Counted from the first letter of the stretch, positions 9,101-30,937 are shown. The stretch is DNA of 64,000 bases from Octopus bimaculoides (GCF_001194135.2 NC_068999.1:52475855-52539854), one strand, 5' to 3'. The notes: generated by a model not told the origin, from the sequence alone. Made by a program: numbers and translations.

Positions 9101-9253
9101 ATACTTCAAACAACCTGTCAGCTTAAATCGGTCAACTATAAAAATTCCTGACGAAGTCCCTCGAGATGAAAAAAATACCATCGATACAATTTCCTTCACT
9201 GCAAGGCTTGACGATGTCTTCAAACAGAATATGGATGATGATCCTCTACTCAG
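9101..9253 (+). CDS. alpha2delta-like gene, first visible exon (YFKQPVSLNRSTIKIPDEV...DDDPLLR)
   Basis: ttacag acceptor, gtgagt donor, phase 2-2; resembles the alpha2delta VWA_N region. Confidence 0.9.
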
Positions 9254-28900: not shown

Positions 28901-30937
28901 GATGAAAGTGAATATGAACGTGTCACCCTTGGTAAAAAAGAAGGGGAGGTAATGAAGGACCTCATCTATAAACACAGTTTCTTTAAAAGAAAAGAATACA
29001 TTGATTTCCAAGGGTCGTGTCGAATTTCTCCAGAAGCGCCAAAGGTAAATTTTCTTTATGATTTTCATTCATCTTTGTGTCCATAACTAAAAAAAGTAAA
29101 GTTCCTTCCCAAGCCATATAGACTCATAATGCTGGTTTCCCGGTTTCCATGAGGTATATATTCCCCACCTGGAAGGTACACCAGTCTGTCGCAGGATCAG
29201 TCATTTTTGCCAGTTGAATAGACTGGAGCAACATGAAATGAAGTGCTTTGCTCAAGAACACAATATGTCACCTGGTTCAGGAATCGAAACCACAATCTTA
29301 TGAACATGAGTCCAACACCCTAACCACTACACCACACACTTCCACTGAGTAAAGTTCCTTCTTAAGTCATATAGACTCATAGGACTGGTTTCTAGGATGT
29401 ATGTATCCCTTACCTGGATGGGACACCAATCCATCACACACATAAAAACAAACAAACTTTTAACTTGTTATTTTGCTTTTATTTACTTAGGTAACTCTTG
29501 AAGGAATACCCAAAAAGCCAGAAGAATTAGATGATTACTATAAAACTCGAGGACCTATCCCACAGTTCCACAGTGAATTTGGCTGTATTCAAGATGTCGT
29601 AGGTTTTAAAGCTATCGACGATGCACTCGGTAAGTAATAGCTATGCTTTAGAAGAAAACTAAATTGATTTTGTTTCTATTGGCTGTGTGGTTAAGAAGTT
29701 TCCCTTGTAAGCACATGGTTCCAAGTTTGATTCTTTTGGTTGGCACCAAACTGAGACATAGTCGATGGAAACTGCACAGAAGCCTGTCAGATGTGTGTGT
29801 GTACATACATATACACCTTCTCTTCAAATTATGACCTATGCATCTTACAGCTATCTGTACTTATGACCACAGAAAATAAATAAACAAATAAGAAAATCGA
29901 TTTTTGGACACTGGGCAGCTACACATATGATTACTATAGCAGCATCTGGCAACATTGGCCTCCCTCAGACCCAGGCATCCACTAAAAACATTTTCAGGCC
30001 TTTTACCTTTAGTAAAAAGGATTATTACCTACACATCTTATGTTTTTATCTAATAACCCTAGCAGACTGAGACCTCCATAAGTGCTTGTCACAATTCCAT
30101 TTATCATTCTTCTAATAATGAGTTCGTACATTCTCTCTGACAGGTTCCAGTGGTATGATAACAGGTAATGTATCTGGACCATGCATGTCTGGATTTTATT
30201 ATGTCAAAGCCTTACCAAAAACAAACCTGTATTTACTGGTAATTGAGAACTGGAAACATTACCGGGAAACACTTTTCTACAATTTTAATTGCCGAATTGC
30301 ACAAAGGTAAGTTTTTCCCTTGAGTTTCTCTATAAATACCTTTTATTATACTTTACATTTAATATACATTACATTTACTATACATATATACCCTAATTTG
30401 ATCTATATCCCACTTTAATACACCCCACACTTTAAATATACACCCTCTCCTTTAATATACACCCCTTTCTTTAATATACACCACATTGTAATATACATCA
30501 CTAGAATATACTCCCCCTTCTTTAATATAGACTCCCTCCTTTAATATATATCCCTTTCTTTAATATACACCCACTGATATATTCATCTCATTTGCATGCA
30601 CATGCACACATACACATATTACATGTACACGTATGCACATCACATACACATACACATACTGCTGTATATGTGTTAATTTAAAAAACCCCAAAATTACTTT
30701 GTGTCCTTTTTTTTTTCTTTTACTTCTAGCATCGTCAACTCTGGTGCTTACCGAATTATTAATGGAACTTGTGCACATGAAGACACATCTAGCAGCACAT
30801 TAGCAGAGGATGGCAAGTGCCCACCTCTAAAGAATATAAAAATGCCATGTGCATATATAGCAGGCATGAGCTTCAAGCCTAGTTGGTGGACAATTATAAC
30901 AGGTCTTGCTATGGCGATGTGCCTTTTTCTACATTGA
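9101..30937 (+). CDS. alpha2delta/CACHD1-family VWA and double-dCache protein, 5'-partial, 18 exons joined (about 991 aa visible)
   Basis: Exons join in frame through GT-AG introns (2977 nt). Hallmarks: DPLLRWQYFGS, YDPRTRPWY, VIDCSLS (MIDAS), GGTS, ATDG, WTSPYLDA, GVIGVD, YNPVKRPWY, hydrophobic C-terminus. Orthology to CACNA2D or CACHD1 cannot be settled by eye, so no symbol is given. Confidence 0.92.
10055..10267. mobile_element. TTAA-type (piggyBac-like) MITE; a second TTAA MITE family lies at about 370-600, 10295-10463 and 13690-13910
   Basis: TTAG-CCCTTTAGCATT...AACGCTAAAGGG-TTA termini. Confidence 0.7.
10265..10294 (+). repeat. Interstitial telomere-type repeat (GGGTTA)5
   Basis: Five perfect hexamers. 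Confidence 0.95.
11765..11912. repeat. (CATA)n/(CATG) compound microsatellite
   Basis: Direct reading. Confidence 0.95.
11980..12540 (-). mobile_element. Internally deleted Tc1/mariner (maT, DD37D-like) transposon
   Basis: VFGVITSDG...WQQDSVPCH...WQPNYPDCNPLDYYVW; TA followed by CAAGGTG TIR-like end at 12538. Confidence 0.8.
14399..14563 (+). CDS. alpha2delta-like exon (WQYFGS...YDPRTRPWY...VVIVIDC)
   Basis: tttcag / gtgaaa, phase 2-2; start of dCache1 and of VWA. Confidence 0.95.
15230..15358 (+). CDS. alpha2delta-like exon (SLSMKGQKFEIAKAVAK...WDEVGK)
   Basis: cttcag / gtaagt, phase 2-2; completes DCSLS MIDAS. Confidence 0.93.
16680..16808 (+). CDS. alpha2delta-like exon (WHHFTTEVLSC...LKAGGTSELE)
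   Basis: tttcag / gtaagc, phase 2-2; MIDAS Thr. Confidence 0.93.
17193..17314 (+). CDS. alpha2delta-like exon (KSFQMSFDLL...IVFATDG...RCGP)
   Basis: ttccag / gtgaga, phase 2-1; MIDAS Asp in TDG. Confidence 0.93.
17512..18074 (-). mobile_element. SINE family A, full length, inverted
   Basis: Reverse complement of the 20945-21340 copy; contains an N gap. Confidence 0.88.
19152..19255 (+). CDS. alpha2delta-like exon (GYYTRSGYVPGPICRYNW...LAPQ)
   Basis: ttgcag / gtaaga, phase 1-0. Confidence 0.9.
19994..20247 (+). CDS. alpha2delta-like exon (ARIFSYLI...WTSPYLDALGLGLMVTHAIPV...GK)
   Basis: tttcag / gtaagt, phase 0-2; end of VWA, resumption of dCache1. Confidence 0.95.
20945..21340 (+). mobile_element. 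tRNA-derived SINE family A, full length (other + copies about 9775-9995, 41465-41660, 44380-44600, 47140-47530, 56398-56770)
   Basis: A box GGCTGTGTGGTAAG, B box GGTTCAGTCCC, internal (TG)n, (TAAAAGA)n tail. Confidence 0.88.
21422..21566 (+). CDS. alpha2delta-like exon (TIGVIGVDATL...FLINKQGETIFHPKL)
   Basis: ttacag / gtaagt, phase 2-0; Cache motifs GVD and FHP. Confidence 0.95.
22612..22761 (+). CDS. alpha2delta-like exon (LVDDPIFIPISQLE...HGDAR)
   Basis: ggtag / gtaagt, phase 0-0. Confidence 0.9.
22865..23390 (-). mobile_element. mariner (DD34D) transposase C-terminal remnant with one TIR
   Basis: WILHDNNAPCH...LYLPDLAPVDFHLFPKMK...IQSESQKVL; TA-TGAGGTGGTACCAAAAAGTTCC end. Confidence 0.85.
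23597..23665 (+). CDS. alpha2delta-like exon (TYYYGALNESEYSFAYILADTDM)
   Basis: ctacag / gtaagt, phase 0-0. Confidence 0.88.
25000..25337 (+). CDS. alpha2delta-like exon (IFRRSQEP...FEKGVR)
   Basis: taatag / gtaagt, phase 0-2, open frame. Confidence 0.88.
26035..26190 (+). CDS. alpha2delta-like exon (ADVLITEPIEEIW...GVFRTYPGHRSTRMYNPVK)
   Basis: ttttag / gtaagt, phase 2-2; start of dCache2. Confidence 0.95.
26335..26718 (-). mobile_element. SINE family A, full length, inverted
   Basis: Reverse complement of the 20945-21340 copy along its whole length. Confidence 0.9.
26937..27145 (+). CDS. alpha2delta-like exon (RPWYKR...STPYMDAAGVG...CTCNFDEDCLS)
   Basis: ttccag / gtaagt, phase 2-1. Confidence 0.95.
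27580..27895. repeat. Degenerate (CCT/CAT)n polypyrimidine tract
   Basis: Almost purely C/T with interspersed CAT. Confidence 0.9.
27961..28093 (+). CDS. alpha2delta-like exon (RVCYVSM...VEAVTGLDILYDDFQN-gap-QTR)
   Basis: ccatag / gtaaat, phase 1-2; contains a 10-N gap (28075-28084) that preserves frame as given. Confidence 0.85.
28540..28660 (+). mobile_element. Penelope-like pseudo-LTR remnant with a decayed minimal hammerhead motif
   Basis: GTAC-CAGAAGA-GACCC.agaac.AGGTC-AAAAC-ATGT-GTC-GTAC followed by AATAAA. Confidence 0.55.
28834..29044 (+). CDS. alpha2delta-like exon (CYLFDSNAYLVMDP...SPEAPK)
   Basis: ttccag / gtaaat, phase 2-0. Confidence 0.93.
29095..29345 (-). mobile_element. tRNA-derived SINE family C (others about 7490-7600, 16480-16600, 18085-18220, 35440-35580, 38715-38830)
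   Basis: Shared GGAGCAAC.TGAAATGAAGTG...GCTCAAGAACAC...GAATCGAAACCAC block. Confidence 0.7.
29491..29629 (+). CDS. alpha2delta-like exon (VTLEGIPKKP...FGCIQDVVGFKAIDDALG)
   Basis: acttag / gtaagt, phase 0-1. Confidence 0.88.
30144..30306 (+). CDS. alpha2delta-like exon (SSGMITGNVSGPCMSGFYYVKALPKTNLYLLVIE...)
   Basis: tgacag / gtaagt, phase 1-2; PKTNLYLLV matches the family delta-region motif. Confidence 0.92.
30405..30580. repeat. Degenerate about 19-20-bp minisatellite (TTTAATATACACCC...)
   Basis: About 9 diverged units. Confidence 0.85.
30730..30937 (+). CDS. alpha2delta-like last exon, GPI-type C-terminus (...PCAYIAGMSFKPSWWTIITGLAMAMCLFLH*)
   Basis: ttctag acceptor, TGA stop, AATAAA at 31023. 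Confidence 0.92.

What the first reader, a model, noticed from the sequence alone, without database searches (positions are those of the whole stretch)
9101..30937. alpha2delta-like protein with two intact amino-acid-sensing dCache pockets, a full MIDAS and a GPI-type tail
Seen: dCache1 has YDPRTRPWY (14487-14513), then Y in WTSPY and D in GVIGVD after the VWA insert. dCache2 has YNPVK/RPWY (26177-26949), Y in STPY and D in TGLD (28047). MIDAS is complete (DCSLS, T, D), and the protein ends in a hydrophobic tail with no cytoplasmic part. Known: YxxxxRxWY...Y...D is the dCache_1 amino-acid-binding motif, which is also the gabapentinoid site of alpha2delta-1. From memory, CACHD1 has a degenerate MIDAS, imperfect motifs and a transmembrane plus cytoplasmic tail. 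Inference: this is a member of a separate invertebrate clade that may act as a GPI-anchored dual amino-acid sensor or ligand-regulated channel subunit rather than a standard CACNA2D or CACHD1 orthologue.
Basis: partly seen in the sequence, partly recalled or inferred. Interest (0 to 1): 0.72.

Follow-up and report, generated by a model that had tools for sequence, protein, structure and literature searches.

The report
Third-clade alpha2delta-like double amino-acid-sensor gene
This is a real, intact-looking gene for a calcium-channel-alpha2delta-like surface protein that keeps amino-acid-binding motifs in both sensor domains. It belongs to an old animal gene family missing from vertebrates, which two 2022 papers noticed but nobody has studied functionally.

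Summary
I built a + strand gene model of 19 exon pieces (9101-30937), all with GT-AG introns and no internal stop. It encodes VWA_N, a VWA domain with a full DxSxS/T/D MIDAS, and the YxxxxRxWY...Y...D motif in both dCache_1 distal modules. It ends in a 17-residue hydrophobic tail with no cytoplasmic residues.

Four of the five assembly gaps are intronic. The gap at 28075-28084 lies inside a coding exon and hides about 28 codons, none of them motif residues. About 150-175 N-terminal codons, including the signal peptide, are not in the window.

The protein is neither a CACNA2D nor a CACHD1 orthologue. It sits in a tight clade (NJ bootstrap 100/100; 48-65% identity) with bivalve, sea slug, annelid, sea urchin, starfish and coral proteins; amphioxus and sea anemone relatives come from the searches and the clade alignment. 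All share these features. Identity to mollusc alpha2delta and CACHD1-like proteins is about 25%.

The kind is already in print as "double-AA_motif" proteins (Gumerov 2022) and probably as an "undescribed clade of alpha2delta-like homologues" (Gauberg 2022). This is a new member of a known but functionally uncharacterised kind. Ligand binding, GPI anchoring and the partner protein remain inferences.

The parts
9101..9253 (+). First exon present in the window (VWA_N part, YFKQPVS...DPLL). It starts at an AG acceptor, so earlier exons lie upstream of it and were not found in the window.
14399..14563 (+). Exon holding the first AA-motif N part, YDPRTRPWY (14487-14513), and the start of the MIDAS, D-C-S(split)
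15230..15358 (+). Exon completing DCSLS; VWA beta1/alpha1
16680..16808 (+). VWA exon with the GGT MIDAS threonine (16795-16797)
17193..17314 (+). VWA exon with the TDG MIDAS aspartate (17272-17274)
19152..19255 (+). Exon with the clade-typical CGPGYYTRSGYVPGPIC insert in the VWA
19994..20247 (+). End of the VWA and return to dCache1; Y of WTSPY at 20177-20179
21422..21566 (+). dCache1 distal module; D of GVIGVD at 21444-21446
22612..22761 (+). dCache1 proximal module exon
23597..23665 (+). Short exon (TYYYGALNES...TDM)
25018..25337 (+). Exon between the two dCache domains
26035..26190 (+). dCache2 distal module; YNPV + split K of the second AA motif (from 26177)
26937..27145 (+). dCache2: RPWY (to 26949), Y of STPY (26995-26997), start of the Cys-rich insert
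27961..28074 (+). dCache2: D of TGLD at 28047-28049; the exon runs into the assembly gap
28075..28084 (.). Assembly gap inside coding sequence. About 28 codons are hidden relative to all orthologues.
28085..28093 (+). Exon remnant after the gap (..QT + split R), followed by a GTAAAT donor
28834..29044 (+). dCache2 proximal module exon (CYLFDSNAYL...)
29491..29629 (+). C-terminal region exon
30144..30306 (+). C-terminal region exon
30730..30937 (+). Last exon. It holds the candidate omega region AGMS (30860-30871), the hydrophobic tail WWTIITGLAMAMCLFLH (30884-30934) and the TGA stop.

Best explanation
**What it is (shown).** The region holds most of one + strand protein-coding gene of a mollusc, probably a cephalopod. 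It encodes a member of the third metazoan branch of the alpha2delta/CACHD1 superfamily. Gumerov et al. 2022 call this kind 'double-AA_motif' proteins, and it is probably Gauberg et al. 2022's 'undescribed clade of alpha2delta-like homologues'.

**Architecture (shown).** A VWA domain with a complete MIDAS is inserted in a first dCache_1 domain, which is itself inserted in a second dCache_1 domain. This is the same architecture as alpha2delta-1 and CACHD1. Both membrane-distal modules keep the full amino-acid motif.

**How it probably works (inferred from established knowledge of the motif and of alpha2delta-1).**
- The protein is secreted and held on the outer face of the plasma membrane by a GPI anchor. 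The anchor would be added near the AGMS site after the C-terminal hydrophobic peptide is removed.
- Each distal pocket can hold a free alpha-amino acid. R and W would bind the carboxylate, and Y and D the amino group.
- The MIDAS uses a divalent cation to grip an acidic residue of a membrane partner.
- The most likely partner is a voltage-gated calcium channel alpha1 subunit. The protein would then promote its trafficking or surface stability, with amino-acid occupancy tuning that function as in alpha2delta-1.
- It has no cytoplasmic part and so cannot signal on its own.
For: - **Gene model.** Nineteen GT-AG exon pieces form an open frame of 739 + 242 codons.
- **Domains.** Pfam finds VWA_N, VWA, dCache_1 and MCP-like PDC. 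The first half matches PDB alpha2delta-1 at E 6e-28 and CACHD1 at E 9e-19. The second half matches only CACHD1, plus bacterial amino-acid chemoreceptors (PctA, PctB) across the motif itself.
- **Orthologues.** Identity is 48-65% over about 900-1000 residues, from coral to starfish to bivalve. It is 32% to the sponge and choanoflagellate proteins and about 25% to mollusc alpha2delta and CACHD1-like proteins.
- **Tree.** NJ bootstrap is 100/100 for the clade and 100/100 for the alpha2delta clade without it. PDB alpha2delta-1 and CACHD1 fragments anchor the other two groups, and source names agree.
- **Conservation.** All 17 motif and MIDAS positions are conserved in the clade, against 23.5% invariant columns overall. 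Every orthologue with a complete 3' end has the same kind of C-terminus: small residues, a short spacer, then a hydrophobic end.
- **Structure.** A high-confidence AlphaFold2 model of the starfish orthologue (pLDDT 89.8, pTM 0.86) superposes over its whole length on alpha2delta-1 (TM 0.72) and on CACHD1 (TM 0.71). The next matches include bacterial amino-acid dCache receptors.
- **Literature.** Motif chemistry and double-motif proteins are in PMC8915833. The alpha2delta-like clade is in PMC8980814. The MIDAS-CaV contact and the GPI anchor of alpha2delta are in PMC6231325 and PMC9901441.
Against: - No binding, anchoring or channel data exist for any member of this clade. Function is pure inference.
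- The second pocket has a Cys-rich insert of about 45 residues between the motif Y and D. I could not inspect model coordinates, so occlusion of that pocket is not excluded.
- Pfam VGCC_alpha2, typical of channel-associated alpha2delta, is absent.
- CACHD1, an equally close structural relative, works through Frizzled/LRP6 as well as channels, so the partner may not be a calcium channel.
- The N-terminus is missing from the window, and about 28 codons are hidden in a gap.
- The deep branching order rests on a neighbour-joining tree with only 69% support.
- The C-terminal hydrophobic stretch could be a plain membrane anchor rather than a GPI signal.
Confidence: 0.72

Rival explanations
1. It is simply the cephalopod orthologue of a canonical calcium-channel alpha2delta subunit (CACNA2D type), as public annotation of its relatives suggests ('alpha-2/delta-3-like').
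For: - Sources name several orthologues alpha-2/delta-2- or -3-like.
- The best PDB sequence hit for the first half is alpha2delta-1.
- It has a full MIDAS and a GPI-type tail, like alpha2delta-1 and -2.
Against: - The alpha2delta clade excludes it in 100/100 bootstraps. That clade holds fish alpha2delta-1, shark alpha2delta-4, and chiton, gastropod and soft-coral alpha2delta.
- Identity to mollusc alpha2delta is only about 25%.
- PF08473 VGCC_alpha2 is absent, although mollusc and fish alpha2delta score E 1e-68 to 3e-176.
- Its second half has no PDB alpha2delta-1 sequence hit.
- Canonical alpha2delta proteins lack the second motif (PMC8915833).
Confidence: 0.04
2. It is the invertebrate orthologue of CACHD1, the Wnt co-receptor-binding and CaV3/CaV2.2-modulating type I membrane protein.
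For: - The second dCache region matches only CACHD1 among PDB eukaryotic chains.
- The intact second motif is the CACHD1 hallmark (PMC8915833).
- Structural similarity is equal to that with alpha2delta-1.
Against: - Molluscs, brachiopods, hemichordates and tunicates have separate CACHD1-like genes. These match the human CACHD1 fragment better (40-44% against 32%).
- Those genes are about 25% identical to this protein.
- This clade has an intact first motif and ends in a hydrophobic stretch. CACHD1-group proteins mostly have long cytoplasmic tails.
Confidence: 0.05
3. It is a member of the third clade, but the motifs are kept for folding or for a constitutively bound structural ligand. The protein would then act as a ligand-independent adhesion or trafficking factor for a non-channel partner, for example Wnt receptors, LRP-type receptors or a synaptic organiser.
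For: - Alpha2delta-1 and CACHD1 both have channel-independent partners (PMC6231325, PMC7615972 title and abstract, PMC7351808 abstract).
- Added amino acids alone had no agonist or antagonist effect on alpha2delta-1 in the Dolphin laboratory's assays (PMC9901441).
- VGCC_alpha2 is absent.
Against: Strict conservation of every ligand-contacting residue in both pockets across more than six phyla is most simply explained by selection for ligand binding. The intact MIDAS is the site that alpha2delta-1 uses to contact CaV channels.
Confidence: 0.17
4. It is a dead or mis-assembled gene copy, so the 'intact' features are meaningless.
For: An assembly gap cuts one coding exon. The 5' end is not in the window. 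The introns are full of repeats and transposon fragments.
Against: - The 981 readable codons have no stop or frameshift.
- All 18 introns are GT-AG and in phase.
- Identity to a bivalve orthologue is 65%.
- The gap sits exactly where orthologues have a conserved segment of 28-29 residues, as expected for missing sequence rather than decay.
Confidence: 0.02

Closest known systems
'Double-AA_motif' double-dCache_1 proteins (Gumerov et al. 2022, PNAS, PMC8915833), probably the same as the 'undescribed clade of alpha2delta-like homologues' (Gauberg et al. 2022, JBC, PMC8980814)
   Same: - The VWA sits inside the first dCache_1, which sits inside the second dCache_1.
- The AA motif is present in both distal modules.
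- The position is outside the alpha2delta and CACHD1 clusters, next to choanoflagellate and protist proteins.
- It is present in a mollusc, a sea anemone and other pre-vertebrate animals.
   Different: - Nothing defining differs.
- The papers give no cephalopod member in the text I could read, and their supplements were not available.
- Neither paper's main text that I could read says that this animal subclade combines a full MIDAS with a tail of the GPI-signal type.
- Neither says that it lacks the N-terminal folate-receptor domain seen in the Lingula (brachiopod), sponge and choanoflagellate relatives.
Alpha2delta-1 and alpha2delta-2 (CACNA2D1, CACNA2D2), the gabapentinoid-binding calcium-channel subunits
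   Same: - Overall fold (TM 0.72).
- An intact first-pocket motif, which is the gabapentin and L-leucine site.
- A perfect MIDAS.
- A C-terminal hydrophobic signal without a cytoplasmic tail.
   Different: - About 25% identity, and a different clade (100/100 bootstraps).
- No VGCC_alpha2 Pfam domain.
- The second pocket motif is intact here but lost in alpha2delta.
- A CGPGYYTRSGYVPGPIC insert in the VWA and a Cys-rich insert in dCache2.
CACHD1 (VWFA and cache domain-containing protein 1)
   Same: - Overall fold (TM 0.71).
- The second-pocket motif is retained.
- There is no VGCC_alpha2 domain.
   Different: - Vertebrate CACHD1 has a disrupted MIDAS and a degenerate first motif (YEHRSRPIY).
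- It is a type I membrane protein with a cytoplasmic tail (PMC6231325).
- Separate CACHD1-like genes exist in molluscs.
Bacterial dCache_1AA amino-acid chemoreceptors (PctA, PctB, PctC, Mlp37, CtaA)
   Same: Both distal modules align to them in sequence and in structure across the ligand motif.
   Different: - The bacterial proteins have a single dCache and no VWA.
- They are flanked by two transmembrane helices and coupled to a cytoplasmic signalling domain.
- This protein has no cytoplasmic output.

Membership tests
alpha2delta/CACHD1 superfamily | VWA_N plus a VWA domain inserted in a Cache region | tested here: met
   Pfam hits: VWA_N E 4e-20, VWA_2 and VWA, dCache_1 and MCP-like PDC.
alpha2delta/CACHD1 superfamily | Whole-length fold of two nested dCache_1 domains plus a VWA | tested here: met
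   Tested on the starfish orthologue only, which is 56% identical. AlphaFold2 gave pLDDT 89.8. Foldseek gave TM 0.72 to alpha2delta-1 and 0.71 to CACHD1 over about 1180 columns. The window's own spliced protein could not be submitted.
Canonical CACNA2D (alpha2delta-1 to -4) | Falls inside the alpha2delta clade | tested here: not met
   The alpha2delta clade excludes it in 100/100 NJ bootstraps. Identity to mollusc and fish alpha2delta is 25-27%.
Canonical CACNA2D (alpha2delta-1 to -4) | Pfam VGCC_alpha2 (PF08473) C-terminal region | tested here: not met
   There is no hit in the window protein or in the starfish orthologue. Chiton and fish alpha2delta hit at E 1e-68 and 3e-176.
Canonical CACNA2D (alpha2delta-1 to -4) | Complete MIDAS (DxSxS, T, D), as in alpha2delta-1 and -2 | tested here: met
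   DCSLS, GGT and TDG are all present and invariant in the clade.
Canonical CACNA2D (alpha2delta-1 to -4) | Binds and up-regulates CaV1 and CaV2 alpha1 subunits | not testable with these tools
   This needs co-expression electrophysiology.
CACHD1 | Falls with CACHD1 proteins in the tree | tested here: not met
   CACHD1-named proteins from Lingula, Pecten, Styela and hemichordates lie in another group. The human CACHD1 fragment matches them at 40-44%, against 32% for this protein. Support for that group as a whole is weak (12%), but the window's clade itself has 100% support.
CACHD1 | Type I transmembrane helix followed by a cytoplasmic tail | tested here: not met
   The protein ends at the last residue of the hydrophobic stretch.
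CACHD1 | AA motif kept in the second dCache_1 | tested here: met
   YNPVKRPWY...STPY...TGLD.
Double-AA_motif proteins (Gumerov 2022) | [quoted passage not shown] | tested here: met
   The second-pocket N part aligns directly to the PctA motif.
Double-AA_motif proteins (Gumerov 2022) | Position outside the alpha2delta and CACHD1 clusters, with pre-vertebrate and protist proteins | tested here: met
   The nearest outgroups are Lingula, Tubulanus, the sponge Sycon, S. rosetta, Pharyngomonas and diplonemids. The split from alpha2delta + CACHD1 has 69% support. This is a neighbour-joining tree only.
Double-AA_motif proteins (Gumerov 2022) | Actual amino-acid binding in both pockets | not testable with these tools
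   It has been neither measured nor docked for this group in the text I could read.
GPI-anchored proteins | A C-terminal hydrophobic peptide of 15-20 residues with no cytosolic residues, preceded by small omega-site residues and a short spacer | tested here: met
   AGMS, then FKPS, then WWTIITGLAMAMCLFLH. The same pattern appears in the Asterias, Mactra, urchin, Acropora and Elysia orthologues. This was judged by rule of thumb, not with a trained predictor.
GPI-anchored proteins | N-terminal signal peptide | tested here: inconclusive
   The N-terminus is not in the window. Orthologues P0045, P0056 and P0002 start with hydrophobic signal-like peptides.
GPI-anchored proteins | Release by PI-PLC or detection of the lipid anchor | not testable with these tools
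   This is an experiment.

The most novel reading that the evidence does not exclude
This clade keeps the ancestral state of the alpha2delta/CACHD1 superfamily. It would be a GPI-anchored surface protein whose two pockets both bind free amino acids, possibly different ones. Occupancy would control, through the intact MIDAS, the surface delivery of a calcium channel or another partner. That would be a direct link between extracellular amino-acid levels and excitability, one that vertebrates lost and split between alpha2delta and CACHD1.
Probability: 0.3. Interest if true: 0.6.

Novelty: new member of a known kind. Interest (0 to 1): 0.4.

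Why it matters
Alpha2delta proteins are the targets of gabapentin and pregabalin, and what their amino-acid pocket does physiologically is still unclear. This gene family keeps two such pockets, a working MIDAS and a lipid-anchor-type tail. It is strongly conserved from corals to amphioxus (48-65% identity among the members compared in full) and has never been studied functionally. 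It could show what the ancestral protein did before alpha2delta and CACHD1 each kept one pocket. It would also give a natural system for asking whether ligand occupancy regulates partner binding. For genome annotation, relatives labelled 'alpha-2/delta-3-like' are mislabelled paralogues. As a discovery its value is limited, because both the double motif and the separate clade were published in 2022.

Tried and rejected
- **Submitting the spliced protein.** I therefore used a profile of eight orthologues and folded orthologues instead.
- **First AlphaFold2 run.** The Mactra fragment with a 31-row alignment gave pLDDT 56.6 and was discarded. The second run, on the full-length Asterias orthologue with a 98-row alignment, gave 89.8.
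- **Search for 5' exons.** tblastn of orthologue N-termini at E up to 50 found nothing credible in 1-9100.
- **Full-length vertebrate CACHD1.** A search seeded with a PDB-derived CACHD1 fragment returned only short exon-sized fragments. CACHD1 was anchored instead by BLAST of that fragment against the collected proteins.
- **Supplements of Gumerov et al.** They are not held, so I could not check whether an octopus sequence is already in their Dataset S3.
- **Bacterial promoter and terminator scan downstream of the stop.** This is irrelevant for a eukaryote.
- **Pfam on transposon-like ORFs.** Only the RT fragment at 59268-59705 was confirmed.
- **Rejected readings.** A canonical CACNA2D orthologue, a CACHD1 orthologue and a pseudogene; the reasons are given under the rival explanations.

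Full report

Yes. Translation of 14487-14513 gives YDPRTRPWY. I located exons with tblastn, using bivalve, sea-slug, annelid and amphioxus homologues, and read every junction. This gave a + strand model of 19 exon pieces, listed under parts. All have AG acceptors and GT donors and compatible phases. The frame is open for 739 codons up to the gap at 28075 and for 242 codons from the gap to a TGA at 30935-30937.

- DCSLS spans the intron at 14563/15230.
- The MIDAS T (GGT) is at 16795 and the MIDAS D (TDG) at 17272.
- The Y of WTSPY is at 20177 and the D of GVIGVD at 21444.
- YNPVK|RPWY runs 26177-26949, with the K codon split by the intron.
- The Y of STPY is at 26995 and the D of TGLD at 28047.

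The protein ends ...PCAYIAGMSFKPS-WWTIITGLAMAMCLFLH. There are 9 N-glycosylation sequons and 24 cysteines, as expected for an ectodomain.

**2. The assembly gaps**

Four gaps (11031-11290, 13159-13168, 15118-15131, 17754-17854) lie in introns. Homologue coordinates continue without loss across the flanking exons. These gaps sit in microsatellite-like repeats.

The gap at 28075-28084 is different. The exon that carries TGLD runs straight into it (...DILYDDFQN-A-NNNNNNNNNN-C-CAA-ACA-AG|GTAAAT). Read literally, A + 10 N + C keeps the frame. Every orthologue, however, has 29 residues between FQN and TRCYLFD, where the window has four placeholder codons plus Q. About 28 codons are therefore hidden. 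In relatives this is a conserved Cys-containing segment, KT.xSMxASDFxKSCGQxYxCPxGxPxC. No motif residue lies in it.

The exon at 9101 begins at an acceptor site. Orthologues have 150-175 more residues upstream, comprising a signal peptide and the two stalk helices. A permissive tblastn found none of these in 1-9100. The 5' end is outside the window or inside its gaps.

**3. What is it?**

Pfam finds VWA_N, VWA/VWA_2, dCache_1 and the MCP-like PDC domain. It does not find VGCC_alpha2.

Against PDB sequences, the first half hits alpha2delta-1 (E 6e-28) and CACHD1 (E 9e-19). The second half hits only CACHD1 (residues 713-813, around FDPTRRQWY...GPY). It also hits bacterial amino-acid chemoreceptors such as PctA and PctB, and these alignments run through the motif itself.

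Database searches return much closer proteins:
- 76% identity in bivalves and 62% in amphioxus.
- 68% in a sea anemone.
- 52-63% over the C-terminal half in Mactra, Elysia, sea urchin and an annelid.
- About 48% in corals.

Vertebrate hits in those searches are alpha2delta-3 at 27-34%.

An exhaustive profile search of 1.84 billion representatives found 5072 relatives. The top hit was a full-length starfish protein (P0064, 1190 aa).

**4. Phylogenetic position**

I aligned the window protein with 106 long hits and built a neighbour-joining tree with 100 bootstraps.

- **The window's clade.** The window protein groups with Mactra, Elysia, Dimorphilus, S. purpuratus, Asterias and Acropora in 100/100 replicates.
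- **The canonical alpha2delta clade.** It is monophyletic without the window protein in 100/100 replicates. Named members include fish alpha2delta-1 and shark alpha2delta-4. It also holds crinoid, millipede, chiton, gastropod and soft-coral alpha2delta.
- **The CACHD1 group.** A third, loosely supported group holds proteins named CACHD1 or CACHD1-like. They come from Lingula, Pecten, Styela, Saccoglossus and Glandiceps, together with protist proteins.

Fragments of human alpha2delta-1 and CACHD1 taken from the PDB alignments match the second and third groups best. They match the window protein only at 31-35%.

Whole-length identities:

| Compared with | Identity |
|---|---|
| Own clade | 48-65% |
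| Lingula, Tubulanus, sponge, S. rosetta | 32% |
| Mollusc alpha2delta and CACHD1-like | about 25% |

Molluscs and cnidarians therefore have canonical alpha2delta as well as this gene, and molluscs also have a CACHD1-like gene. It is an old paralogue. No vertebrate member appeared in any search.

The nearest outgroups are a brachiopod, a nemertean, a sponge, a choanoflagellate, a heterolobosean and diplonemids. The split of this assemblage from alpha2delta + CACHD1 has 69% support, so the deep order is tentative.

**5. Are the features special to this gene?**

No, they are clade features.
- All 17 motif and MIDAS positions are conserved in every orthologue that covers them. The only changes are Y/F swaps and two gene-model artefacts.
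- Only 23.5% of columns are invariant overall.
- All orthologues with a complete 3' end finish with small residues, a short spacer and a hydrophobic stretch, with no cytoplasmic tail.
- Most non-alpha2delta proteins in the top 150 hits also carry both motifs. Canonical alpha2delta proteins have lost the second one.

**6. Structure**

The spliced window protein could not be submitted for folding.

A first model of a Mactra fragment was poor (pLDDT 56.6). The full-length starfish orthologue, folded with a 98-row alignment, gave pLDDT 89.8 and pTM 0.86.

Foldseek places this model equally on alpha2delta-1 (E 3e-55, TM 0.72) and on CACHD1 (E 3e-50, TM 0.71) over about 1180 columns. Further down the list are bacterial dCache amino-acid receptors (PctA, Mlp37, CtaA).

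The nested dCache/VWA architecture is thus confirmed for the clade. I could not read model coordinates, so whether pocket 2 is open remains untested. In the window protein the Y and D of pocket 2 are 78 residues apart because of a Cys-rich insert. The D lies in the family-wide AVxGxD strand.

**7. Likely mechanism**

Shown: the domain architecture, the intact ligand and metal motifs, the tail type, the clade and its conservation.

Inferred from the literature:
- In dCache_1AA domains, R and W bind the ligand carboxylate and Y and D the amino group. The same site in alpha2delta-1 binds L-leucine and gabapentin (PMC8915833, PMC9901441).
- The alpha2delta MIDAS coordinates an aspartate of the CaV alpha1 domain I loop and is needed for channel trafficking (PMC6231325, PMC9901441).
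- Alpha2delta proteins are GPI-anchored, whereas CACHD1 is a type I membrane protein with a disrupted MIDAS (PMC6231325).

By analogy, the window's protein is most likely a GPI-anchored ectoprotein. It would hold an amino acid in each distal pocket and use its MIDAS to bind a membrane partner. A calcium channel is the most probable partner. A non-channel partner, as for CACHD1 with Frizzled/LRP6, is a serious alternative.

**8. Comparison with what is known, and novelty**

Gumerov et al. [quoted passage not shown] These lie at and near the root of the alpha2delta/CACHD1 tree, and the authors regard them as ancestral to both clusters.

Gauberg et al. 2022 report 'an undescribed clade of alpha2delta-like homologues' in Trichoplax, Lymnaea stagnalis, Nematostella vectensis and Salpingoeca rosetta. 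The taxa agree with the clade and outgroup found here.

A full-text search found no other paper that uses these motif terms for animal proteins.

The gene is therefore a new member, apparently cephalopod, of a kind that is known bioinformatically but has not been studied functionally. The claim to novelty is not, and the functional claim is untested.

**9. Verdict**

- Novelty: a new member of a known kind.
- Interest is moderate (0.4). The family is a good experimental target, but the finding adds little beyond the two 2022 papers.

Noticed in passing
related proteins P0066 (Lingula), P0067 (Sycon), P0068 (Salpingoeca rosetta), N-terminal about 30-145 aa: The nearest non-orthologous relatives carry an N-terminal folate-receptor-family domain (Pfam PF03024, E 8e-16 to 4e-11) fused to the double-dCache/VWA core. 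The window's clade does not have it (checked on the full-length starfish P0064). A small-molecule-binding domain added to a double amino-acid sensor seems worth a look.
   Followed up: partly
window 59268-59705 (+): A reverse-transcriptase fragment (Pfam RVT_1, E 5e-12) of a non-LTR-type retroelement. It is cut off by the assembly gap at 59706-60616.
   Followed up: partly
window 11975-12313 (-) and 55566-55973 (-): These ORFs look by eye like a mariner/Tc1-type transposase remnant (inside the first long intron) and an LTR-retroelement RT N-terminus. Neither gave a Pfam hit at E 0.01, so they remain unconfirmed.
   Followed up: partly
window 28075-28084: In the translations around the gaps, those flanking and inside the gene, and several others in the window, sit in TA/CA-type microsatellite (translated YIYIYI or HTHTHT). 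This one sits in unique coding sequence and hides about 28 conserved codons. The stated length of 10 N is clearly a placeholder.
   Followed up: yes
window 19152-19255 (+): The exon encodes CGPGYYTRSGYVPGPICRYNW, an insert in the VWA domain that is nearly invariant from corals to amphioxus. The alignment to alpha2delta-1 breaks there. Its role is unknown.
   Followed up: no
public annotation of orthologues (e.g. XP_071807181 Asterias, S. purpuratus P0042, Elysia P0045): Members of this clade are named 'alpha-2/delta-2-like' or 'alpha-2/delta-3-like' in public records. They are paralogues of alpha2delta and not orthologues. Many gene models are fragmented into two or three predicted proteins.
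   Followed up: yes
window 26737-26911 and 27377-27904 (+): The introns flanking the dCache2 exons contain long low-complexity tracts. These translate as poly-Ser/Pro/His (for example HHHHHYYHYHHHH and SSSSPSP repeats). They are simple repeats, not exons.
   Followed up: no
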